Below, one piece after another: positions 27,809 to 42,100 of a DNA stretch of 64,000 nt. Each line of letters opens with the position of its first letter. Position 1 is the stretch's first letter. Both the position numbers and the translations under genes were made by a program. The notes under the pieces were generated by a model. It was given only the letters and a program-made list of their open reading frames with translations, searched no databases and was not told the DNA's origin. Origin of the DNA: Chrysemys picta bellii. Taxonomy: Eukaryota. The stretch is taken from assembly GCF_011386835.1 (NCBI RefSeq), contig NC_088807.1, positions 1,426,001 to 1,490,000 on the forward strand, in the 5' to 3' direction.

Positions 27809-28430
27809 GAGAGAACCAGGTGGCGCTAGGCGCTGTACAAAAAGCCGGGCGGGCTCCCTCGGTGTCAGATGAGCTGACAGGTGGAAACAGATAGAAGTAA
27901 ACAAGCCATAGAAATTGAAGAGGAATCAAGGGGCTATTTCCCGTGAGGGGGGTTTGCGGAGCTGGGGATTCAGTGTATCTGGGTTACAGGCAATAACCCC
28001 CCACCCCCGCCTGGCTCTGCGTGTCAGGTTAAGGGAGCCGGTGACTTGAGGCCCTGAGCTTAGCCCGAAGGGATCTGAGGGCAGGATCCGGCCTACGGGA
28101 AGGAAGCCAGTGGTTCTCTTGGAACCTGGCGGGAGCCGGGAGAGAGGAACGCGGCTCTGTGCCGTTAAAAGGACTTCCCAGCTGGTTTGCAAAAGAAGTT
28201 AGATGGGGCGGTGTAGTGGTTAGAGCAGGGGGCTGGGAGCCAGGACTCCTGGGTTCTATCCCCGGCTCTGGGAAGGGAGTGGGGTCGTGGTTAGAGCAGG
28301 GGGGCTGGGAGCCAGGACTCCTGGGTTCTATCCCTGGCTCTGGGAAGGACTGTGGGGTCGTGGTTAGAGCGGGGGGGGCTGGGAGCCAGGACTCCTGGGT
28401 TCTATCCCCGGCTCTGGGAAGGACTGTGGG

Positions 28431-28903
28431 TGTCACGGAGTATTGGGGAACTCAGGGCCCTGCACCCCCGGCTTCCTGCGATTCACCATGACTCTCAGCC
28501 AGCCAGTAAAGCAGAAGGTTTATTTGGATGACAGGAACACAGTCCAAGACAGGTCTTGCAGGCACAGACAACAGGGCCCCCCCTCAGTTAGGTCCAGCTT
28601 GGGGTCCCAGGGCATCCCAGCCCCCCCCTTTGGGGGGTCAGAGCCATCTCTGCCTCCCAGCCATCTCTCCAGCCTCCTTCCAGCCTGCTTCCCACACTCT
28701 GCCTTCAGCGACCCCTCCCACAGCCTTTGTTCAGTTTCCCGGGCCCCGGAGTCATCTGACCTCCAACCCCCTCCTGGGTTCTCATGTTACAAGCTCAGGT
28801 ATGTTCCCTTGGGCCGGCTCCCATCCCCCGATGCAGACCATCCTAGTCACACTCCCCTGTCAGCATTCACACACCCCAGCAAGAACAGTCCCAGTTCGTC
28901 ACA
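28431..28903 (-). repeat. 3' LTR
   Basis: TGTCACGG...TTCGTCACA, AATAAA on minus at 28524-28519, and the PPT immediately adjacent. Confidence 0.95.
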
Positions 28904-28917
28904 TCTCTCCCCCCTTC
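28904..28917 (-). other. Polypurine tract
   Basis: GAAGGGGGGAGAGA on the minus strand abutting the 3' LTR. Confidence 0.9.
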
Positions 28918-28969
28918 GAGACCGAACTGAGCAGGGTCACTTTAGCCAGTGACCCGGGGAAGTTCGAAC

Positions 28970-31648
28970 CTACCCCCGTTCCCATGGATGCCCCCGCATC
29001 CCTCCAGTTCCTTGGTGAGAATTACACCAGGCCCCTTCCGTTCCACGCCCCCCCTTAGGTCGGGGTTGCTTGATGGCACTCGCAGTTCGCATGTGGGAAG
29101 GTTTATGCGGCCTGTGCCCTTTTCCCACCCCCATACCTCTGGGGTTCCAACTGGGCTGTGGTCTTCTCCCAGCGCTCCAGTCTGGAGGTCTGTGCTTTGG
29201 GCTCTCTTGGTTTAGAGCCGCCCTTTTAACCTTGGCCACCCTCTGGAAAGGATCCTTTATGCTGGGCAAGGGTCCTAAAGCTCTTTTCCCCTTGTCCCAG
29301 GCCTTCCTCCCCCTCTGACAGGGGTCACAGGATCCGCAGTACTGTCGGACAGTAACAAAGACCCCAGGCCAGTAAAAGCTCCGTAGCAGCCTCTGCTGGG
29401 TACGCCAGGTTCCCTGGTGCCCTGAGAGGGGAATGTCATGGGCCCGGCACAGCAGCTGGCGGCGATACTTCTGGGGTACCACCAGCTGCCTCCTGATCCC
29501 CCCTGACTCCATTTTCCCTGGGGGAGCCCATTCTCGGTACAGGAACCCCTTCTCCCACAGGAACCTTTTCCGGCCACCTCGTTCCATGGTCTGTACCGCA
29601 TTGAGGTCGGCCAGGTCCCTTATCTTCCGCAAGGAGGGGTCTCTCTGTAACTCGGCCTGGAACTCAGCAGCTGGGACAGGGATGGCCACCTGCTCTTTCT
29701 CGCCCGCTGGGTCCGAAGCTGCAGCCTCCCTGAGCCGCGTCCCTGGGCGTTCCCTCCCCACCAGGTTAGGGTCCTGCGCCTCAGGCAAGGCACCCCCCCC
29801 AAGGCCAGGGCGCAGGGCCCCTCGCCGGCTCTGACTGCGGGTCACAACCAGTGCCTTTTGGGGGTTGCTTGGCCAGTTCTCCAGGTCCCCCCCCATCAAT
29901 ACCTCAGTGGGCAGATACGGGTGTACCCCCACATCCTTGGGGCCCTCCTTGGCCCCCCACTTCAGGTGTACCCTTGCCACGGGCACTTTGACTGGTGTTC
30001 CGCCCACCCCCGTCAGGGTCAGGTAGGAGTTGGGCACCACCTGATCTGGGGCCACCACCTCGGGCCGGGCCAGCGTCACCTCTGCGCCCGTATCCCAGTA
30101 TCCATTGACCTTCCTCCCATCCACCTCCAGGGGAACAAGGTACTCTCTCCGGAGGGACAGCCCCGCGCCCACCGTATAAACCAAAAACCCTGAGTCTGGG
30201 GCATCCAGCCCCCTAGAGGAGCTGGCCTGGGGCCCTTCTCTCTCTTGAGCAGTTGATAAGCTGCCAGCCCCTCTTGCGTGAGAAGCCTGCCCCTCGTCCG
30301 TCTGGGCCTCTACCAAGTTAACCCTATGCGGGTTCGGTCTGCTCAGTCTGTCCTTGAGCTTGGGGCACTGGGCCCGAACGTGGCCTCTTCGGCCGCAGTA
30401 ATAGCAGCTCATGTCCTGTGGGTCCCCTCGAGCCGGTCGGTTGTCCCTGACGCTGGGCATTCCCCGTGGGAGGGGATTCCCCATATTCCCTCTTTGGGAG
30501 GTCCCAGGGTGACTCTCTCTCTGCATCGCGGCGGGCCTGTTCCTTTGGGGCTCCTCCCTGCCACCCCCTGACCGGCTCTTTACAAACTCATCAGCCAGCT
30601 GCCCGGCGTGTCGCGGGTTCTCTGGCTTTCTGTCCACCAACCACAGCCTCAGGTCGGATGGGCACCGCTCATACAGTTGCTCCAGTACCAGCAGTTTAAT
30701 CAGGTCCTCCTTCGTCTGGGCCCCACCCGCCCACTTGCTGGCGTATCTTTCCATGCGGACGGCTAGTTGCAGATATGAGATCTCAGGGGTTTTATCTTGA
30801 CTCCGGAACCTTCCCCGGTACATCTCAGGAGTCAGCCCAAACTCACGTAGCAGGGCCTTTTTTAATAGTTCGTAGTCCCCTTTCTCTGCCTCTCCCAGTT
30901 GGCGGTACAATGCCACGGATTTGGGGTCCAGTAAGGGGGTAAGGACCCGGAGTCTGTCCGCGGGATCAACCCGGTGCAGCTCGCAGGCCGTCTCAAAGGC
31001 CTCCAGGAAGTCATCCATGTCCTCCCCCTCCTTGTATGGGGCCATGATGCACTTATCAAAGCTCCGTGCAGTCCTGGGTCCCCCCTCACTCACCGCAGCC
31101 GGGGGTTCGCTGCCCCTCAGTCTCGCCAGTTCCAGTTCATGCTGACGCTGTCTCTCATTCTCCTCCCGTTCACGCTGATGCTGTCTCTCTTTCTCCTCCC
31201 GTTCATGCTGTCTCTGTTGTTCACGATCCTCCAGCTCCCTCAGTTTTAGCTCTTTCTCCCATTCCAGCCAATTCCGCTCCCCGGATGCCGAACGTCGCCG
31301 GGAGGCTCCTCTGCTGGCCGGCGGGCTTCGCCGGGGGGACCCCCTGCTGGCCGGGGGGGTCACGGCGCCTTCGGTATTTGCTGGGCTCCTCCCCACCCTT
31401 CCCCTAGGCATAGGAAGGAGGGGTCTCGGGAAGCCCTCAGCAGCCGGCTGACCACTCCCAGCCGGGACAGACACTGGTGCCTGCGCTGCATTTGCCAGGC
31501 TGCTTCCCTGAGACACAGGGATCAGTTCATTCGCGCGATCTTCCGCCTCCAGCTGGGCAATGAGCTGTTCTTTGGTGAGCCTCCCAATGCGCAGCCGCCT
31601 CTGCTTGCACAGCTCCACCAGGTCGCTCTTAAGCCGCTTGGCATACAT
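28970..31648 (-). CDS. Retrotransposon Gag-protease-truncated integrase polyprotein (892 aa from the first ATG)
   Basis: N-terminal helical LKSDLVELCKQRRL...KEQLIAQL, an E/R coiled coil, and a SCAN-like capsid CTD (EMYRGRF...LVLEQLYERCPSDLRLWLVDRKPENPRHAGQLADEF, about 30826-30583). Then the zinc knuckle CYYCGRRGHVRAQC (about 30406-30365), the aspartic protease WDTGAEVTL (DTG at 30094-30086) and the integrase HHCC HDIPLSGH...CGSCDPC (about 29440-29318). No DDE, YxDD or RNase H motifs follow. Confidence 0.92.
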   Translation of the reverse strand: MYAKRLKSDLVELCKQRRLRIGRLTKEQLIAQLEAEDRANELIPVSQGSSLANAAQAPVSVPAGSGQPAAEGFPRPLLPMPRGRVGRSPANTEGAVTPPASRGSPRRSPPASRGASRRRSASGERNWLEWEKELKLRELEDREQQRQHEREEKERQHQREREENERQRQHELELARLRGSEPPAAVSEGGPRTARSFDKCIMAPYKEGEDMDDFLEAFETACELHRVDPADRLRVLTPLLDPKSVALYRQLGEAEKGDYELLKKALLREFGLTPEMYRGRFRSQDKTPEISYLQLAVRMERYASKWAGGAQTKEDLIKLLVLEQLYERCPSDLRLWLVDRKPENPRHAGQLADEFVKSRSGGGREEPQRNRPAAMQRESHPGTSQRGNMGNPLPRGMPSVRDNRPARGDPQDMSCYYCGRRGHVRAQCPKLKDRLSRPNPHRVNLVEAQTDEGQASHARGAGSLSTAQEREGPQASSSRGLDAPDSGFLVYTVGAGLSLRREYLVPLEVDGRKVNGYWDTGAEVTLARPEVVAPDQVVPNSYLTLTGVGGTPVKVPVARVHLKWGAKEGPKDVGVHPYLPTEVLMGGDLENWPSNPQKALVVTRSQSRRGALRPGLGGGALPEAQDPNLVGRERPGTRLREAAASDPAGEKEQVAIPVPAAEFQAELQRDPSLRKIRDLADLNAVQTMERGGRKRFLWEKGFLYREWAPPGKMESGGIRRQLVVPQKYRRQLLCRAHDIPLSGHQGTWRTQQRLLRSFYWPGVFVTVRQYCGSCDPCQRGRKAWDKGKRALGPLPSIKDPFQRVAKVKRAALNQESPKHRPPDWSAGRRPQPSWNPRGMGVGKGHRPHKPSHMRTASAIKQPRPKGGRGTEGAWCNSHQGTGGMRGHPWERG

Positions 31649-31967
31649 CTTCCTGCTGGCCACTCACCGGCCTGTGTGCTCACAGCTCCCCACAGTTCCC
31701 AGGGGGCCCCCTAGTGTGCCAGCCCTTCTCGAGGTCACCACCTCTCTGCCAGGGTCGAGCTGCAGACTCCTCCGCCCCTGGGACCACTCGCTGTGATCCC
31801 ACGGGGGACCCTGTTACTGCAAAAGTCCTTCTCGCTGGTCACACACTCCCAGGGGTAATAACCGTCTCTCTCCCACTCTTCAGCAGGCCTGGTCCCCGTC
31901 AATCCCCCTTCGTTTTACTGCTCCCCAGTCACTTACTGCAGGAAGCGCCGTCCATGGGGTGCAGTAG

Positions 31968-31985
31968 ATCCCACCGCTGCCACCA
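31968..31985 (-). other. Primer-binding site, tRNA-Leu
   Basis: Minus-strand TGGTGGCAGCGGTGGGAT starts 2 nt inside the 5' LTR boundary. It is complementary to the 3' end ATCCCACCGCTGCCA-CCA recalled for vertebrate tRNA-Leu(AAG/TAG). Confidence 0.88.
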
Positions 31986-31987
31986 GT

Positions 31988-32460
31988 TGTCACGGAGTAT
32001 TGGGGAACTCAGGGCCCTGCACCCCCGGCTTCCTGCGATTCACCATGACTCTCAGCCAGCCAGTAAAGCAGAAGGTTTATTTGGATGACAGGAACACAGT
32101 CCAAGACAGGTCTTGCAGGCACAGACAACAGGGCCCCCCCTCAGTTAGGTCCAGCTTGGGGTCCCAGGGCATCCCAGCCCCCCCCTTTGGGGGGTCAGAG
32201 CCATCTCTGCCTCCCAGCCATCTCTCCAGCCTCCTTCCAGCCTGCTTCCCACACTCTGCCTTCAGCGACCCCTCCCACAGCCTTTGTTCAGTTTCCCGGG
32301 CCCCGGAGTCATCTGACCTCCAACCCCCTCCTGGGTTCTCATGTTACAAGCTCAGGTATGTTCCCTTGGGCCGGCTCCCATCCCCCGATGCAGACCATCC
32401 TAGTCACACTCCCCTGTCAGCATTCACACACCCCAGCAAGAACAGTCCCAGTTCGTCACA
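31988..32460 (-). repeat. 5' LTR
   Basis: Same length as the 3' LTR and, by eye and by the identical ORF-track translations, the same sequence. Confidence 0.95.
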
Positions 32461-34545
32461 GTGGGGTCGTGGTTAGAGCAGGGGGGTCTGGGAGCCAGGA
32501 CTCCTGGGTTCTATCCCCGGCTCTGGGAAGGACTGTGGGGTCGTGGTTAGAGCAGGAGGCTGTGGGTCAGGACTCTACTCCCAGCTCTGCAACTGACCTA
32601 AAGGCCTCAGGTTCTCCCCCCGTAAAGCAAAAGGGACGTCGCTCACGGCGCCGGCGTGGGAGCTTTGACCCCCTCCCGGGAGCGATTTGTCTTTGTATTA
32701 TGATTGTTCAGGTACAGCCCGCTGACCCCTCCCCCAGCCACGGACCAGGGCCCCACTGCGCTCGGCGCTGCACGTAAACCCTGCAGTCATTCCGTTCCCC
32801 TGCGCTCCCAGATTTGCCGAGGGCGAAGCCGGCAGCTGGAAATCGAGTCCAGGTAAAGTTCCACATTTCCCTCCCGAGCCTCCCCCCACCCCCGCCAAGT
32901 CTGGTGCTTTTACACCTCCGGCTTCCTGGTTCAAATCGCTTTTCTTCCCCCCCACCCCCACCCCCATGGGTGCCTGAAAGACCCACACAAAACAGCGAGG
33001 GCAGCGGTGAAACTGACACACAGCGCTGCCAAAATCCCCCCCCCCCCCCCGCCAGCTGGAAAAAGAGCTGATCCCTCCCCACACACACCGCCCCCCCACC
33101 CCGTGTCTGTCAGTTACAGGAATCCTCCGAGGGGCGCTTGCAGCAGGGGAAAGGAAAAACCCTTCATGCGAAGCTGTGCCGATTGCCCCACTCTGCCCTG
33201 CCGTCCGCAGACGCTGCCGGGGAAATCAGAACATCCCCGTGGGGCAGAGATCGCAGGGAGGGGGCCCCAGTCCTCAACCGGCCCTTAGCCAGCGGGCTGG
33301 AGGCTGTTCTCCCCTAGTTACAATGACCTCCCAGCACTGCTGAGGCCTTGTCGAGGGCTGAGGTGCTGCAGGCGAGTGGTTAGAGCTCTGCCTGTGGCGT
33401 CCGGACGCCTGGGTTCTCTTCTCCGCTCAGCGAAGGAGGTGTTGTCCCATGGTGAGTGCAGAGAACTGGCTGTCAGGACTCCTGGGTTCTATCCCTGACA
33501 CTGGGAGGGGAGTGGGGTCAGTGGTTAGAGCAGGGGGGATGGGAGCGAGGACTCCTGGGTTCTGTCCCCGGCTCTGGGAGGGGAGGGGGGTCTAGTGGTT
33601 AGAGCAGGGGGATGGGAGCCAGGACTCCTGGGTTCTCTCCCCGGCTCTGAGAGGGGAGTGGGGTCAGTGGTTAGAGCAGGGGGATGGGAGCCAGGACTCC
33701 TGGGTTCTCTCCCCGGCTCTGGGAGGGGAGGGGGGTCTAGTGGTTAGAGCAGAGGGGATGGGAGCCAGGACTCCTGGGTTCTCTCCCCGGCTCTGGGAGG
33801 GAAGTGGGGTCTAGTGGTTAGAGCAGGGGGGCTGGGAGCAGGACACCTGGGTTGCAGCCAGCTGTCTCACCCCTCCTGAGGAGGACAGGCTGTCCCGTGA
33901 CTGGTGTTGCTGCTGGTATTTACCGCCCTGGCCTTGGTTTGGGGATAAACAGGGCGTGTTTGTGTTCTTGTCTCCCGGGCTGATGCAGGACAGCGTGTGC
34001 CCGCCGGGGAGAGGCTGTGGGCACCGGCTCTTCCTTCCCATAGCCTGGGTGCGAAGGAACCCGGCCCAACCGTGCCCCGAGATGGGGGTAAATGCCCGGC
34101 TCTGCTGTTTGCCCCGGGGCAGAGGGGAGCTCACTGGGGGGGGGGGGCTGACTTGTGCCTTGGGGGGCACAGATGATGTAACCAGCCCCCCCCCCCACGC
34201 ACACTCCTACGCGAACTCACAGCCGCTGGCACCCACGTGTGGGCTTTAAAAATACACGGCAGCAAAAATCCCCATGCGGGGGGGAAATGAACCCAGCCCC
34301 ACCACCGCAGACTCAGCGAGACAGTCCCTGTCCCGAAGGGCCCCCACTCCGACCAGACGCTAGATGGGGAAACTGAGTCTGGCCCGAGGTCGCACAGCAA
34401 GTCCGGGGCCCAGCCAGGACTTGAACCCCGGTGTCCTGTATCCGAGCCCTGCCCCGCATGGGGTGGGCGGAGCGCCCCCGGGTGGCTGCCCCCTGCCCGC
34501 GCCAGGGCCTGTCTCCTGTCGCTGTCATGGAAAATTCTCTGCCAG

Positions 34546-34728: not shown

Positions 34729-37169
34729 GTAAGTACCCGCGGGGCGCACGGGGCAGGTGCGACCGAGCGGGACACGTTGGGGGTTTTGGGGGGTGGGGGA
34801 GGGCGGGAGAGGTGTCTGTAGAAGACAAAGCCCCGAATAGCAGGATGTGGGGTTACCCGAGGTGGGTCCAGGGCTCGGCCCAGGGACCCGGTCTGCTCTG
34901 TGCCTCAGCTTCCCCAGGTGGGCACGAGGGGGCTGACCCAGCTCCCGGGGGCTCCGGGACATTGAGAGGTTACCGGGCACCTCGACCGCCAGCCCGGCCC
35001 CACCCCTCCCCCCGGGGATAGAACCCAGGCGTCCGGGCTCCCTGCTCTAACCACCAGCTCCCCCCACCCCTCCCCCCGGGGATAGAACCCAGCCGTCCGG
35101 GCTCCCTGCTCTAACCACCAGCTCCCCCCACCCCTCCCCCCGGGGATAGAACCCAGGCGTCCGGGCTCCCAGCTCCCCCCGCCCCCAGGCGTCCTGCCCT
35201 TTTATCCAGCGGACAATGGCTCCCCTGCGTGTTGCCATAGCGATTCACCCCAGGCGCTGGGCTTTGTCTGGCCATGGAGGTGGGGGGGACTCCAGAGCCC
35301 CCGCCCCCTGTTGGCTGCCTGCCCAGGGGCCAGACCAGGGGGGCTCTTTGCAGGTGCCCCTGGTGGCTCAGCTCTGCCCCCCCGACGGTGGCGCAGCAGG
35401 AGCAGAGGGGGGGCTACACAGCCGGGGACCCCCCCCAGCAGCGACTGCCCCCTGCTCTAACCACCAGGCCCCACTCCCCTCCCAGAGCCGGGGAGAGAAC
35501 CCAGGAGTCCTGGCTCCCAGCTCCCCCCACTCTAACCCAACAGCCCCCACTCCCCTCCCAGAGCCGGGGAGAGAACCCAGGAGTCCTGGCCCCCATCCCC
35601 CCTGCTCTAATCACTAGTCCCCACTCCCCTCCCAGAGCTGGGGCGAGAACCCAGGAGTCCGGGCTCCCAGCCCCCCCTGCTCTAACCACTAGTCCCCACT
35701 CCCCTCCCAGAGCTGGGGCGAGAACCCAGGAGTCCGGGCTCCCAGCCCCCTCCACTAACCACTAGCCCCTCGTCCCCAAGCCGGGGATAGAACCCAGGTG
35801 TCCTGGCTCTTGCGATGAGCGAGGTTCTCGAGCGCTGTTACCCTGTGGTGCCCTTTGCCCGTGTGTGATCCCTTCCCCCGGCTGACACGCCATGGCAAAG
35901 CCAGGGACTCACTTGCAGCCCCCAGGGCACGTTTGAGTGGAAAGCTGCCAACTGGTCACCAGGAGCCAGGCCCCCGCGCCCTGCCCAGAACCCGGCCCGA
36001 CTCCCAGCCTTTGGGGTGGGGGTGGCGGGACCCCCAGGCCCCTCGTGGAGCGAATGCACCTGGTGCTCATGGGAAAATGTCCCCCACGTCCCAGGCCCCC
36101 GGCTCGTTAAACCCTCGGCCTGGTTTCCCTGGGGAGGCTGGGCGCTGCAGGAGGGGGGGGTCGCCGGGCCGCGGGGGAGCTGGGAGCGGATCGGGTCGGT
36201 CCCTCCAGCCCTCTGTGCTCCGCCAGTGTGGGATAAATCACCCCCCACTGCCCCTGTGTCTGGCCACTGTCCCGTCTGGGTGTGCCGCGTCGGGCTCACC
36301 GGGAGCCCCGTGCCCCTGGGGGGCTGCCCCATGGCCGGTGGGCCCCGGCTGTCGGGAATGAGCCGCGGTTTTCCGAGCCTGAAAGGGGCTCTCGGAACCG
36401 CCTGAAAACGGGGTGAGAATGGGGGAAGGAGCCTGGGGCCTTCAGAGCCGGACTCCTGGGTTCTGTTCCCACACCCTTTGGGGGCCTCGCAGCCGTCCGG
36501 GCGTCCGGCCTGGTGCCGTCTCTCTGCGGCGGGGCGACGCTGGTGCCAGGGCATTGTTTGCAGCTCGCTAGTTAGCAGGTTACCCCTGCCTCGCAGGTGG
36601 GGAAACTGAGCCCCAGGGCGGCAGTGACTCTGGGCAGACCCCGATCTCCTGGGTTCCAGCCCGGGGCCTCCACAAGGCCGGCCTCCCTGGCCCCCAGGTT
36701 CAGTCTACGGCTGCTTGTGGGGGGTTGGCCCTGCTCCGTGCCTCAGTTTCCCCATTCCCCCCTGTAGCACCCGGCTGATGCTCCCTGGGGCGCGGGTGGC
36801 TTCACGGTGCTTTGGAAGGGGAAGAGGAAATGGTCCGGGACGCCGAGTGACGACCGCACCTGCCCCCCCGCCCCCCGGCTGTCACGTGCAGAGCAGACAA
36901 ACCTGTTGGGATGGAAAACCTGACAGGCCCAGCCTCCGCTTTCCCATGACAAGTCTCTGACTCCTGCCCTGCCCCCCGATGCCACCCAGACGCGGGGCGG
37001 GACGGGGCAGGTCCACGCTGCCGCGGCTGGGTCTGGGCAATTACTGGATGGGGCAGCTTGGGACGGGGATTGGAGATCCAGCGAAAATTGGCTTCCCGAG
37101 AGGGGGGATTCCTTAAAAGCTGCTTTCCTGGGTAAGTGAGACCCAGCTGTTAGCAGGGGAGCGCCTTGA

Positions 37170-39168: not shown

Positions 39169-42100
39169 AACAAGCCGTGGAAGAAACTCAAGAGCATGGT
39201 CCACTGGTCGCCTTTCGTCGTGTCCTTCAAGAAGCGCTACCCCTGGGTGCAGCTGGCCGGCCATGCGGGTGAGAGGGGCCGCGGGAACGGGGGGCACGGT
39301 AAGCCCGTGCGGGGAGGGGAGCTCTGCTGGGGGGTGCAGCCAGCCCCGATGGTGGCTGGCGAAGGCAGTGCCGTGTGCCCAGCGGGCACGGGCCGGGGTG
39401 TGTCCATGCTCCCCTGACCCCAGCCATCCCCTCCTTCCCCCGCAGGGAATTTCAAAGCCGGGGACTACGGGCGGATCCTGAAGAAGTTCTGCCCGCGGGA
39501 GCAGCAGTGCCTGGAGCGCCTCATGCGGGACTCACTGCGCCCCCACGTGCCCACCTACTTCGGGCTGGCGCAGCGGGACGGCGAGCGCTACAACCAGATG
39601 GAGGATCTGCTGGCCAGCTTCGAGACGCCCTCCATCATGGACTGCAAGATGGGGGTCAGGTGAGAACCTGGCTGCGTGGCACAGGCAAGCTGCCTCAGCG
39701 AGAGAACCCAGGAGTCCTGGCTCCCAGCCCCCCTGCTCTAATCACTAGCCCCCACTCCCCTCCCAGAGCCGGGAGAGAACCCAGGAGTCCTGGCTCCCAG
39801 CCCCCCTGCTCTAATCACTAGCCCCCACTCCCCTCCCAGAGCCGGGGAGAGAACCCAGGAGTCCTGGCTCCCAGCCCCCCCTGCTCTAACCCACTAGCCC
39901 CCACTCCCCTCCCAGAGCCGGGGAGAGAACCCAGGAGTCCTGGCTCCCAGCCCCCTCCTCTAACCACTATCCCCCACAGCCGGGGTAGAACCCAGGAGCC
40001 CTGCGCTGGGAGTGCCAGAGCCAAGGGCTGGCTGAGGCATGGGCCGTGGGGTGAGCGCCCCCGGCTGATCCCCGCTCTGCCCCCCGCAGGACGTACCTGG
40101 AGGAAGAGCTGGAGCAAGCTCGCCAGCGGCCCCGGCTGCGCTGTGACATGTACGAGAAGATGGTGGCGGTGGACCCGGGGGCGCCCACGCCCGAGGAGCA
40201 TGCCCAGCGCGCCGTGCTCAAACCCCGTTACATGCAGTGGAGGGAGTCGCTCAGCTCCACCGCCACGCTGGGCTTTCGCATCGAGGGCATCAAGGTGGGG
40301 GCCACGAGCTGGGGCCGAGCTAGCCTGGCTGGGGGGTCACATCTGGCTGGGGCAGAGCTAGGCTGGCTGGAGCAGGGGCGTCTGGCTCTGGGGAGGGGAG
40401 ATCACGTCTGGCTGGAGCAGGGGCGTCTGGCTCTGGGGAGGGGAGATCACGTCTGGCTGGGGCAGGGGCGTCTGGCTCTGGGGAGGGGAGATCACGTCTG
40501 GCTGGGGCAGGGGCGTCTGGCTCTGGGGAGGGGAGATCACGTCTGGCTGGGGCAGGGGCGTCTGGCTCTGGGGAGGGGAGATCACGTCTGGCTGGGGCAG
40601 GGGCGTCTGGCTCTGGGGAGGGGAGATCACGTCTGGCTGGGGCAGGGGCGTCTGGCTCTGGGGAGGGGAGATCACGTCTGGCTGGGGCAGGGGCGTCTGG
40701 CTCTGGGGAGGGGAGATCACGTCTGGCTGGGGCAGGGCTGGTTCTAGGGGCAGCGGGTCTGACTGGGGCACGTGCGTCCCCCTCGGCCCCCCATGCCCCG
40801 GCCTGACGGGTCTCTGTGTCCCCAGAAAGCTGACGGCACCTGCAGCACCAACTTCAAGAAGACGCGGCTGCCCGAGCAGGTGGTGCAGGCACTGGGCGAC
40901 TTCGTGGACGGCGACAGAACCATTCTGGTGAGGGGCTGGGCTCCCCGGTGGTGCTGCTGGCCCTGGGTGGGGGGGCATCGCCCAGAGCTTGGGCTTTTCG
41001 CTGCCAAGATGCAGCCAGCTCTGGGGTACAGTACAGCGGCTGGCTAGTATCTGTGTGACTTTTGTTTCAACCAGCATGCGGCAGCACAGCGCCCCCTAGT
41101 GCTGTCCTAGCGCCAGCCCTGCCTGCCAGGGGAGAGCGCCCCCTGCTGAGCCCCCATCCCACAGCCCCCCAACACTACCGTGGTGCCAGCACCTGCCGAT
41201 CGGGCCAGCCGCATTCCCCTCCCTGCCAGGGCCCAGACGGGCTGGGCCTCGCTAGTGCTCAGGTGGGTCCCGCAGCGCCTTCGCCCCCTGCTGGCCTCCT
41301 GCAGCTACCTCGGCCTCACCTGTCCACCTCCCCTCTTCCTCCCCAGACAAACTACCTGGGCCGCTTGAAGGAGCTGCGGGCGGCGCTGGAGCAGTCCGAG
41401 TTCTTCAAGACCCACGAGGTAGGTTCTGGCTGGGTGTGGGGCTGAGGGAGGCGGCAGGCCTGTGGGGGAGGCGCTCCCTGACGAGTGGGGGGCCCAGCCA
41501 GTGGCCCTCGCCCTGGGGATCTGGGCCCATGCGCCAGGATGCAGGGTCTGTTCTCCTGCCCCCTGGCAGCCCCGGGTCCGTAGGAAGCAACACGTCTCCC
41601 CTCTGGCCACGCCTGGATGCGCTGGGTTCTACAGCGCCTGCCTCCTGTGGATCCCAGAGCAATGAATGGACCCAGGAGTCCTGGCTCCCAGCCCCCCTGC
41701 TCTAACCACTAGACCCCACTCCCTTCCCAGAGCTGGGGAGAGAATCCAGGAGTCCAGCCTCCCTCCGCCCCCCTGCTCTAACCACTAGACCCCACTCACC
41801 TCCCAGAGCTGGGGATAGAACCCAGGAGTCCTGGCTCCCAGCCCCCCTGCTCTAACCCACCAGAGCCCACTCCGCTCTCAGAGCCGGGGAGAGAACCCAG
41901 GAGTCCAGCCTCCCTCCCCCCCCCCGCTCTAACCACTAGACCCCGCTCCCCTCCCAGAGCTGGGGAGAGAACCCAGGAGTCCTGGCTCCCAGCCCCCCAC
42001 TCACTGAGCTCTGTGTTTGCCCCCCGACAGGTGGTGGGGAGCTCTCTGCTGTTTGTCCATGACCGGACGGGGCTGGCCAAGGTCTGGATGATCGACTTCG

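What the first reader, a model, noticed from the sequence alone, without database searches (positions are those of the whole stretch)
28431..32460. Young non-autonomous Gmr1-like retrotransposon encoding only Gag(SCAN)-protease-integrase Zn-finger
All cis signals are intact: LTRs, tRNA-Leu PBS, PPT and TSD. One uninterrupted 892-aa ORF encodes capsid/SCAN, CCHC and DTG protease, followed directly by the integrase HHCC domain. That PR-IN order, with no RT between them, is diagnostic of Gmr1-type Gypsy elements, the established source of the vertebrate SCAN domain. The ORF leaves integrase at PFQRVAK (about 29230), just before the first catalytic Asp, and RT/RNase H are absent. It looks like a mobile 'Gag-protease-only' parasite that builds and matures its own capsid but borrows RT and IN in trans. 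This architecture parallels domesticated Gag-PR genes such as PEG10 and is a candidate intermediate toward domestication.
Basis: partly seen in the sequence, partly recalled or inferred. Interest (0 to 1): 0.82.

Follow-up and report, generated by a model that had tools for sequence, protein, structure and literature searches.

The report
Gag-protease-only turtle retrotransposon, recently inserted
This is a freshly inserted copy of an old family of cut-down painted-turtle jumping genes that still encode their own capsid and protease but must borrow the copying and integration enzymes from full-length relatives in the same genome, a lifestyle already well known in plants.

Summary
Window 28431-32460, minus strand, holds a 4030-bp LTR retrotransposon. 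It has two identical 473-bp LTRs, a 5-bp target duplication, an 18/18 tRNA-Leu(AAG) primer site and a polypurine tract. One 892-aa ORF encodes Gag (SCAN-like capsid, CCHC), a retropepsin and the integrase zinc finger. It leaves integrase at the codon of the first catalytic Asp.

The host is Chrysemys picta. Full-length relatives there (89-91% identical internally) have the Gmr1-like order Gag-PR-IN-RT-RNaseH in one ORF. They are themselves recently active.

The deletion is not private to this copy. At least 15 annotated Chrysemys proteins share the junction and a 264-bp filler of unknown origin, as do proteins from Malaclemys and Gopherus.

The family is a mosaic. Its LTR and 3' part form their own clade across hosts, while its gag groups with each host's autonomous elements. 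That indicates repeated recombination with the helper.

Protease and linker look constrained. The integrase finger looks relaxed.

'Semi-autonomous' Gag-Pro elements are already described in wheat. This is therefore a new member of a known kind. Nothing supports domestication.

The parts
28426..28430 (.). Target-site duplication, left copy (GTGGG on the + strand)
   Evidence: The same 5 bases follow the other LTR. The pre-insertion site lies inside a 73-74-nt tandem repeat.
28431..28903 (-). 3' LTR of the element (473 bp, TG..CA)
   Evidence: 100% identical to 31988-32460. It carries an AATAAA signal in a stretch conserved with autonomous LTRs.
28904..28917 (-). Polypurine tract (GAAGGGGGGAGAGA on the element strand)
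   Evidence: It is identical in the autonomous elements L004-L008.
28904..28965 (-). Retained 3' end of the autonomous internal region (last 62 nt of pol, including the PPT)
   Evidence: About 91% identical to the end of pol in L004, L005, L006 and L008.
28966..29229 (-). 264-bp 'filler' of unknown origin that replaces the IN core, RT and RNase H. It is read in frame as the last 86 codons, with the stop at 28970-28972.
   Evidence: No match in any autonomous locus, elsewhere in the window, or in 320 related proteins. It is present in every non-autonomous copy. Its peptide is also found in Malaclemys and Gopherus proteins.
28970..31648 (-). Single ORF of 892 aa (Gag-PR-IN N-terminal domain-filler) plus its stop codon. 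An in-frame GTG at 31663 would give 897 aa.
   Evidence: 98-99% identical to Chrysemys picta XP_065442585.1 (P0001).
29306..29479 (-). Integrase zinc-binding domain (HHCC, Pfam Integrase_H2C2)
   Evidence: E 1e-17, 64 bits. The zinc ligands are invariant in 16 Chrysemys copies. Amino-acid change is accelerated on the non-autonomous branch.
29882..30151 (-). Retropepsin-type aspartic protease core (DTG at 30086-30094)
   Evidence: Profile hits to DDI1/2, HIV/FIV protease and the protease part of the Ty3 Gag-Pol polyprotein. AlphaFold model and Foldseek. Sub-threshold in Pfam.
30359..30409 (-). CCHC zinc knuckle (nucleocapsid)
   Evidence: zf-CCHC, 21.3 bits against a cut-off of 20.8.
30572..30829 (-). 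Capsid C-terminal domain matching Pfam SCAN
   Evidence: E 5.8e-11.
31131..31358 (-). Two in-frame 33-nt tandem repeats in the N-terminal part of gag (31131-31217 and 31295-31358)
   Evidence: Their copy number differs between family members and accounts for ORF lengths of 871-930 aa.
31649..31967 (-). 5' leader (untranslated)
   Evidence: Over the first ~55 nt after the PBS, 1 mismatch to Chrysemys non-autonomous and autonomous copies and 4 to the Caretta element. In the sliding comparison, el_sense 492-778 is 97-98% identical to Chrysemys autonomous elements and 89-91% to Caretta.
31968..31985 (-). Primer-binding site complementary to the tRNA-Leu(AAG) 3' end
   Evidence: 18/18 match to the sequence given for LeuAAG 3' positions 68-85 in PMC12452697. 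It is identical in all non-autonomous and autonomous copies.
31988..32460 (-). 5' LTR of the element
32461..32465 (.). Target-site duplication, right copy (GTGGG)

Best explanation
The element is a very recent insertion of a 'semi-autonomous' deletion lineage of a turtle Gmr1-like (Ty3/Gypsy-type) LTR retrotransposon.

Shown:
- An ancestral element lost about 2.3 kb, from the first catalytic Asp of integrase to 62 nt before the 3' LTR. It gained a 264-bp filler in its place.
- The derivative kept the LTR ends, the tRNA-Leu PBS, the leader, the PPT and a Gag-PR-IN(zinc finger) ORF.
- It has since multiplied. Independent 5-bp TSDs are seen in Chrysemys picta, and proteins with the same junction and filler peptide occur in Malaclemys and Gopherus.
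- It shares the genome with intact, recently active autonomous elements that encode Gag-PR-IN-RT-RNaseH as one ORF.

Inferred:
- Its RNA is packaged into particles and is reverse-transcribed and integrated by the RT and IN of the autonomous elements.
- Co-packaging of the two RNAs explains why its gag is repeatedly replaced by the resident autonomous gag through template switching.
- Its own Gag-PR product probably takes part in particle assembly and maturation, adding Gag to a system whose autonomous members make Gag and Pol 1:1 from a single ORF.
- The integrase zinc finger and the filler tail are probably carried along without function.
For: Structure.

Domains.

Gmr1-like order SCAN-CCHC-PR-H2C2-rve-SH3-RVT-RNaseH in full-length relatives. 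This matches the published definition (bioRxiv 10.1101/2025.03.03.638093).

Shared junction and filler:
- 15 annotated Chrysemys proteins plus the window.
- Seven further DNA copies.
- Malaclemys and Gopherus proteins.

Transposition, not segmental duplication: a distinct 5-bp TSD at every one of the 7 full-length non-autonomous loci and the 4 autonomous loci with paired LTRs.

Youth: LTR pairs are 98.3-100% identical.

Helpers in the same genome:
- ORFs of 1619-1644 aa, each found as an identical protein at two loci.
- LTR pairs 99.5-99.8% identical.

Shared cis signals: the PBS, the start of the leader, the PPT and the first 7-8 nt of the LTR are identical or nearly so. The LTR body is only about 64% identical.

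Recombination:
- The window's gag is 95-100% identical to autonomous copies but only 76-81% to other non-autonomous copies over el_sense 1862-2360.
- Its 3' part is 92-100% identical to non-autonomous copies but 78-85% to autonomous ones.
- The two regions give conflicting, well-supported trees, and AU tests reject the alternatives: p 3e-4 and 4e-5, with the non-autonomous clade at 100/99.9 support.

Constraint:
- Protease omega is about 0.2, p below 1e-6.
- Linker is 0.23, p 0.003.
- Residues 621-860 overall are 0.43, p 0.01.
Against: - No direct evidence of expression, particle formation or trans-mobilisation.
- The copies examined were found through annotated intact ORFs. The share of intact copies in the genome is therefore unknown (ascertainment bias).
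- Low dN/dS in gag and possibly in the protease may have been acquired while those segments sat in autonomous elements. Within the eight non-autonomous copies, the gag ratio is 0.82 and not significantly below 1.
- The integrase finger shows 2 synonymous against 11 non-synonymous variants within the family. Its branch omega is 0.53-0.66, against 0.16 in autonomous elements.
- The last ~30 codons differ in frame between copies.
- LTR bodies differ strongly from those of the sampled helpers, so the true helper subfamily may not have been sampled.
- The groups used in the AU tests were named after a first tree had been seen.
Confidence: 0.82

Rival explanations
1. Pure cis-parasite. The element needs only its LTR ends, PBS, leader and PPT. 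The long ORF has no role in its spread. It stays open only because copies are young and because gag (and perhaps PR) is regularly overwritten by recombination or gene conversion from autonomous elements.
For: - Gag is 95-100% identical to autonomous copies and groups by host rather than by element type.
- The gag ratio among the eight copies is 0.82, not significantly below 1. The IN finger shows 2 synonymous against 11 non-synonymous variants.
- The reading frame of the C-terminal tail varies.
- A simulation shows that a 240-codon stretch stays stop-free with probability 0.2-0.5 at 2-5% neutral divergence, so recent ORF integrity carries little weight.
Against: - The family-specific 3' segment (residues 621-860) is not shared with any sampled autonomous element, yet it shows an excess of synonymous change: 16 synonymous against 22 non-synonymous, ratio 0.43, p 0.01. 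The linker is 0.23, p 0.003.
- The window-type protease is a distinct lineage with branch omega of about 0.22 over dS of about 0.19.
- The junction and the reading frame are preserved as far as a Gopherus protein at 78% identity.
Confidence: 0.3
2. Host-domesticated, or on the way to domestication: a Gag-PR gene like PEG10, or a Gag-derived restriction factor that interferes with the autonomous elements.
For: - Gag-PR coding capacity is retained.
- NCBI annotates the copies as protein-coding loci.
- A few gene models join the SCAN-like Gag part to host domains (P0020, P0030, P0005). These were not examined.
Against: - The element is multi-copy, and each copy has LTRs, a PBS, a PPT and its own TSD.
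- Insertions are very young.
- Copies differ in length and in the reading frame of the tail.
- There is no evidence of an orthologous, LTR-less, single-copy locus.
Confidence: 0.04
3. A private post-insertion deletion or an assembly collapse of an ordinary full-length element.
Against: - The same breakpoint and the same 264-bp filler occur in eight DNA copies on different chromosomes, in 15 annotated proteins, and in two other turtle genera.
- There are no N runs in the window.
Confidence: 0.01

Closest known systems
Gmr1-like Ty3/Gypsy LTR retrotransposons of deuterostomes (the source of the vertebrate SCAN domain)
   Same: - Gag whose capsid C-terminal domain matches SCAN.
- CCHC knuckle.
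- Protease followed directly by integrase. Full-length turtle relatives have PR-IN-RT-RNaseH in one ORF.
- Such elements are reported as particularly abundant in turtle genomes (bioRxiv 10.1101/2025.03.03.638093).
   Different: This element lacks the integrase core, the RT and the RNase H, and carries a 264-bp unrelated filler instead. It cannot transpose on its own.
Wheat/barley RLG_Sabrina_SA ('semi-autonomous', GAG-Pro ORF) with its proposed helper RLG_Wilma (PMC9744471)
   Same: - A Gypsy-type LTR element that keeps an intact Gag-protease ORF but has no RT or IN.
- It has persisted for millions of years beside an autonomous partner.
- Homology to the partner is concentrated in a few essential motifs.
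- It is proposed to contribute Gag to a shared particle.
   Different: - A plant chromovirus-type lineage with thousands of copies and almost no remaining homology to its helper.
- The turtle family is 89-91% identical to its helpers in the shared internal region and visibly recombines with them.
- It also retains the integrase zinc finger, because of the Gmr1 gene order.
RLG_Quinta / RLG_Cereba pair of wheat centromeres (PMC11302176) and plant TR-GAG elements
   Same: A non-autonomous derivative that evolved from its autonomous partner and still encodes GAG. The partnership is inferred from a conserved LTR, PBS and PPT.
   Different: Quinta and TR-GAG encode Gag only, with no protease or integrase remnant. 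They are plant lineages.
Mouse IAP I-delta-1 and ETn/MusD (from my own knowledge, not checked here)
   Same: Vertebrate LTR elements in which internally deleted derivatives are mobilised in trans by full-length relatives and can out-number them.
   Different: These are class II endogenous retroviruses. ETn has no coding capacity, and I-delta-1 makes a gag-pol fusion rather than Gag-PR.
PEG10 / RTL1-type domesticated Gag-PR genes
   Same: Gag plus retropepsin coding capacity derived from a Ty3/Gypsy-type element.
   Different: Those are single-copy host genes without LTRs, conserved at orthologous loci. This is a multi-copy mobile element with fresh TSDs. No feature of domestication was found.

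Membership tests
LTR retrotransposon | Two direct LTRs ending TG..CA, flanked by a short target-site duplication | tested here: met
   473-bp LTRs, 100% identical, with a 5-bp TSD GTGGG.
LTR retrotransposon | PBS complementary to a tRNA 3' end next to the 5' LTR, and a PPT next to the 3' LTR | tested here: met
   18/18 match to the tRNA-Leu-AAG 3' end. The PPT is at 28904-28917.
Gmr1-like clade of Ty3/Gypsy | Integrase placed upstream of RT (order PR-IN-RT-RNaseH) | tested here: met
   In the window, PR is followed directly by the IN zinc finger. Full-length relatives P0008, P0009 and P0010 show SCAN, CCHC, H2C2, rve, SH3, RVT_1, RNaseH in that order. The Chrysemys full-length copies, 89-91% identical at DNA level, carry the same Pfam set in one ORF.
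Gmr1-like clade of Ty3/Gypsy | Gag capsid C-terminal domain homologous to SCAN | tested here: met
   Pfam SCAN, E 5.8e-11, above the gathering score.
Gmr1-like clade of Ty3/Gypsy | RT/IN phylogeny placing the family with the type element Gmr1 of Gadus morhua | not tested
Placement rests on domain order and the SCAN-like Gag, the criteria used in bioRxiv 10.1101/2025.03.03.638093.
Non-autonomous / semi-autonomous LTR retrotransposon | Lacks RT, RNase H and the integrase catalytic core | tested here: met
   No rve, RVT_1 or RNaseH hit. Homology to full-length elements stops at window 29230 and resumes 62 nt before the LTR.
Non-autonomous / semi-autonomous LTR retrotransposon | The deletion is a family trait: several copies at different loci, each with its own TSD | tested here: met
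   Eight DNA copies, including the window, and 15 annotated proteins share the junction and filler. TSDs differ at every one of the seven full-length loci. The eighth copy, L010, is 5'-truncated.
Non-autonomous / semi-autonomous LTR retrotransposon | An autonomous partner in the same genome sharing the cis signals | tested here: met
   Intact 1619-1644-aa elements with LTRs 99.5-99.8% identical. The PBS, the start of the leader, the PPT and the LTR termini are conserved. The LTR body is only about 64% identical.
Non-autonomous / semi-autonomous LTR retrotransposon | Actual mobilisation in trans by the partner's RT and IN | not testable with these tools
   Only indirect evidence: the same 5-bp TSD length, and mosaic sequences that imply co-packaging or recombination.
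Domesticated Gag-PR host gene (PEG10-like) | Single-copy, LTR-less locus conserved at an orthologous position | tested here: not met
   Multi-copy, with intact LTRs and fresh TSDs at every full-length locus examined.
TR-GAG (plant terminal-repeat retrotransposons with a GAG domain) | The internal region encodes Gag only | tested here: not met
   A protease and the integrase zinc finger are also encoded.

The most novel reading that the evidence does not exclude
The Gag-PR ORF of this lineage may be actively maintained because the lineage acts as a long-term 'Gag supplier'. On this reading it is a co-operating partner rather than a mere parasite of single-ORF Gmr1-like elements, which otherwise make Gag and Pol in equal amounts. 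The partnership would have lasted since before emydid and testudinid turtles separated, with gag kept compatible by recurrent recombination with each host's resident helper. It would be the first vertebrate example of the plant-type 'semi-autonomous' retrotransposon consortium. It would also be a standing pool of expressed SCAN-type capsid genes from which host genes could be drawn.
Probability: 0.25. Interest if true: 0.55.

Novelty: new member of a known kind. Interest (0 to 1): 0.35.

Why it matters
- It gives a clean vertebrate case of a coding ('semi-autonomous') non-autonomous LTR retrotransposon. Its helper is identified in the same genome, both appear to be currently or very recently active, and there is a readable record of helper-parasite recombination.
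- That makes the painted turtle a possible system for a specific question: does a non-autonomous element benefit from making its own capsid and protease?
- It is also a practical annotation warning. About 15 'uncharacterized protein LOC…' entries of Chrysemys picta are copies of this element.
- It does not open a new category, and it does not bear on SCAN or PEG10 domestication beyond analogy.

Tried and rejected
1. Origin of the 264-bp filler. I ran sensitive blastn and tblastx against autonomous loci on both strands, blastx against 320 related proteins, a search of the rest of the window, Pfam, and a database search restricted to residues 800-892. Only the family itself was found.
2. Origin of the deletion from a spliced subgenomic RNA, as in copia. 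The window has AAG|GTT at the 5' breakpoint, but the autonomous elements read ATG|GAC there, and the filler is foreign. I rejected this as unsupported.
3. Target preference for the 73-nt tRNA-like tandem repeat. The repeat is very common in this window (67 hits), and it does not abut the insertion site at any other copy examined (only two distant hits, in L001). The insertion there is probably chance.
4. SAP domain at the Gag N-terminus. Pfam finds SAP at the same position in alligator, sea-urchin and softshell-turtle relatives, but not in the window protein. BLASTP and a PDB search were negative.
5. ORF integrity as proof of selection. A simulation shows it is uninformative at the low divergence within Chrysemys.
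6. tRNA genes in the window or loci, to check the PBS directly. None were found, so the PBS was checked against a published tRNA-Leu-AAG 3' fragment instead.
7. Rfam and the bacterial promoter/terminator scan gave nothing relevant.
8. DNA for the Gopherus protein P0014 was not on record. Synonymous divergence across hosts could therefore not be measured.

Full report
**What is there.** Window 28431-32460 holds a 4030-bp LTR retrotransposon on the minus strand.
- The two LTRs (28431-28903 and 31988-32460) are 473 bp, begin TG and end CA, and are identical at every base.
- The five bases GTGGG flank both ends. The pre-insertion site lies inside a 73-74-nt tandem repeat.
- On the element's strand the 5' LTR is followed, after two bases, by an 18-nt PBS (31968-31985). 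It is the exact reverse complement of the 3' end of tRNA-Leu-AAG as printed in PMC12452697. That sequence is human; I assume the turtle tRNA is the same.
- A polypurine tract (28904-28917) abuts the 3' LTR.
- A single ORF runs from the ATG at 31648 to the stop at 28970-28972, 892 aa.
- Pfam finds SCAN, a CCHC knuckle and the integrase H2C2 zinc-binding domain above threshold. It finds no integrase core, RT or RNase H.
- The protease is below Pfam thresholds but is real. A profile of the family's protease region hits DDI2, DDI1, HIV, FIV and Ty3 proteases, best E 2.2e-7. An AlphaFold model with pLDDT above 90 over the core matches retropepsin structures at probability 1.0. The DTG motif is at 30086-30094.

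**Host and relatives.** The closest database proteins are 'uncharacterized protein LOC…' entries of Chrysemys picta bellii, 98-99% identical.
- Full-length relatives from sea turtles carry SCAN, CCHC, H2C2, rve, SH3, RVT_1 and RNase H in that order in one ORF.
- This is the Gmr1-like order. A recent survey uses it as the defining feature and reports such elements to be particularly abundant in turtles (bioRxiv 10.1101/2025.03.03.638093).
- Chrysemys itself has full-length elements with ORFs of 1619-1644 aa.
- Two of these proteins are each encoded, without a single difference, at two different loci. The LTR pairs of those copies are 99.5-99.8% identical, and each copy has its own 5-bp TSD.
- The autonomous lineage is therefore recently active in the same genome.

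**The deletion.** Against every full-length copy, from Chrysemys and from Caretta, homology runs from the LTR through gag, protease and the integrase zinc finger. It stops at window 29230.
- That base is the first of the codon that encodes the first catalytic Asp in the full-length elements.
- Homology resumes 62 nt before the 3' LTR. In the full-length elements this stretch is the end of the pol ORF and contains the PPT.
- The 264 bp in between (28966-29229) match nothing in the autonomous loci, the rest of the window or 320 related proteins. Its origin is unknown.

**The deletion is a family trait.** Fifteen annotated Chrysemys proteins of 871-930 aa share the same junction and tail.
- I retrieved DNA for seven of them, on six different chromosome records. 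All have the same breakpoint and filler.
- Six are full-length, with LTR pairs 98.3-100% identical and a different 5-bp TSD each. One is 5'-truncated.
- The same junction and filler peptide occur in proteins from Malaclemys terrapin.
- They also occur, at 78% identity over 170 residues and with one zinc ligand lost, in a protein from the tortoise Gopherus evgoodei.
- Unless there was horizontal transfer, the lineage predates the split of emydid and testudinid turtles. From memory that split is tens of millions of years old; I did not check the date.

**Relation to the helper.** The LTR of the deletion family is only about 64% identical to the LTRs of the sampled autonomous elements.
- The first 7-8 nt, the terminal ACA, the stretch around the AATAAA signal and the PPT are conserved. 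The PBS and the first ~55 nt after it are identical or differ at one base.
- A sliding comparison shows a mosaic.
 - The window's leader and gag are 95-100% identical to Chrysemys autonomous copies. Part of that stretch is only 76-81% identical to other non-autonomous copies.
 - The segment from the end of the protease to the junction is 92-100% identical to the other non-autonomous copies and only 78-85% identical to autonomous ones.
- Trees say the same thing.
 - For residues 621-806, all non-autonomous sequences, the Gopherus one included, form one clade with support 100/99.9.
 - For capsid-nucleocapsid, sequences group by host: Gopherus non-autonomous with tortoise autonomous, Chrysemys non-autonomous with Chrysemys autonomous.
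 - AU tests reject the opposite groupings, p 3e-4 and 4e-5. The groups were named after a first tree had been seen.
- The simplest reading is recurrent recombination between the deletion lineage and whatever autonomous elements live in the same genome. For retroelements this is expected when two RNAs are packaged in one particle. Gene conversion at the DNA level is not excluded.

**Selection.**
- Pairwise dN/dS between non-autonomous subfamilies is 0.43-0.46 over the 806 shared codons and 0.17-0.19 in the protease. Because of the mosaic history, part of this divergence may have arisen inside autonomous elements.
- In a three-sequence branch decomposition, the integrase finger has omega 0.53-0.66 on the non-autonomous branch against 0.16 on the autonomous branch. 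Amino-acid change is four to five times faster at similar dS.
- Within the eight non-autonomous copies, counting variant codons gave the following:
 - Linker (621-720): ratio 0.23, p 0.003.
 - Integrase finger: 2 synonymous against 11 non-synonymous variants, consistent with no constraint.
 - First 54 filler codons: 0.28, p 0.08.
 - Protease: 0.23, p below 1e-6.
 - Gag: 0.82, not significant.
- The last ~30 codons differ in frame among copies.
- A simulation shows that ORF integrity alone is weak evidence at the divergences involved.
- I conclude three things. The ORF is not evolving neutrally as a whole. The protease and the adjoining linker are constrained. The integrase finger is probably a passenger.
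- Whether the element's own Gag-PR is needed for its spread remains open. I put that at roughly even odds.

**How it most likely works.**
- Shown: the architecture, the shared junction, independent recent insertions with integrase-type TSDs, co-resident intact helpers, conserved cis signals and mosaic ancestry.
- Inferred: transcription from the 5' LTR and translation of Gag-PR-(IN finger).
- Also inferred: packaging of the short RNA, often together with a full-length RNA, into particles built from both elements' Gag.
- Also inferred: reverse transcription primed by tRNA-Leu and integration by the helper's enzymes.
- Because the autonomous elements make Gag and Pol from one uninterrupted ORF, a Gag-PR-only transcript would add Gag to the system. 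This is the same argument made for wheat 'semi-autonomous' elements (PMC9744471).

**Comparison with what is known.** Non-autonomous LTR elements that keep coding capacity are established in plants.
- RLG_Sabrina_SA encodes GAG-Pro and is called semi-autonomous (PMC9744471).
- RLG_Quinta encodes GAG and is cross-mobilised by RLG_Cereba, from which it evolved (PMC11302176).
- TR-GAG elements encode Gag only.
- I found no description of such a derivative for Gmr1-like elements or for turtles in the searchable literature. Repbase could not be consulted.
- I therefore rate it a new member of a known kind.
- The analogy with PEG10 rests only on shared Gag-PR content. None of the hallmarks of domestication is present.

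**Limits.**
- The copies were reached through annotated proteins, so broken copies are invisible here.
- No turtle genome could be searched directly.
Branch tests used individual natural copies.

Noticed in passing
window 28201-28430, 32461-32580, 33375-33853 and about 60 further places (e.g. 972-1253, 14132-14404, 35045-35809, 41719-41998): A 73-74-nt unit with tRNA-like A- and B-box-looking motifs (GTGGTTAGAGC ... GGGTTCTATCCC) occurs in short tandem arrays all over the window (67 blastn hits). The element inserted into one such array. ARAGORN and Rfam do not call the units tRNAs.
   Followed up: partly
window 18527-20607 (ORF 17616-21491, minus strand): An 83/166-bp G-rich minisatellite of about 25 copies keeps all six frames open and produces a spurious 1291-aa ORF with no Pfam hit.
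   Followed up: partly
window 1-64000: The whole window is very GC-rich (66.6% G+C, CpG observed/expected 0.47). It has no N runs. No long ORF other than the element's has a Pfam match.
   Followed up: partly
window 31131-31217 and 31295-31358: Two in-frame 33-nt tandem repeats lie in the charged N-terminal part of gag (ERQ/EREE-type 11-residue units). Their copy number varies between family members and explains protein lengths of 871-930 aa.
   Followed up: partly
window 31540-31640 (Gag residues ~4-38): The Gag N-terminus resembles a SAP motif. Pfam finds SAP at the same N-terminal position in relatives from alligator (P0205), softshell turtle (P0023, below cut-off) and sea urchin (P0222). 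It does not find it in the window protein.
   Followed up: partly
L002:163-456: Upstream of the P0003 copy lies a second, older fragment (84-86% identical) made of filler, PPT and LTR start of the same non-autonomous family. The locus also sits in a large tandem-repeat field.
   Followed up: no
L005:7825-7930: The autonomous copy encoding P0178 has an intact 1622-aa ORF, but its 3' LTR matches its 5' LTR over only 96 bp. This suggests an internally deleted 3' LTR.
   Followed up: partly
L010:1415-4816: The copy encoding P0293 lacks its 5' LTR and leader (it starts at element position 727), yet keeps the full ORF and is annotated as a gene.
   Followed up: partly
proteins P0005, P0020, P0030, P0319 (Chrysemys picta gene models): Several NCBI gene models join this family's Gag/SCAN part to host-looking domains. 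Examples are 'cyclin-dependent kinase 12-like', Ig domains, 'guanylate-binding protein 1-like' and 'dystrobrevin beta'. They could be annotation chimeras or real exonisation.
   Followed up: no
L006/L007 and L008/L009: Each of two autonomous polyproteins (1619 aa and 1644 aa) is encoded identically at two different loci, each locus with its own 5-bp TSD. This is evidence of very recent autonomous transposition in Chrysemys picta.
   Followed up: yes
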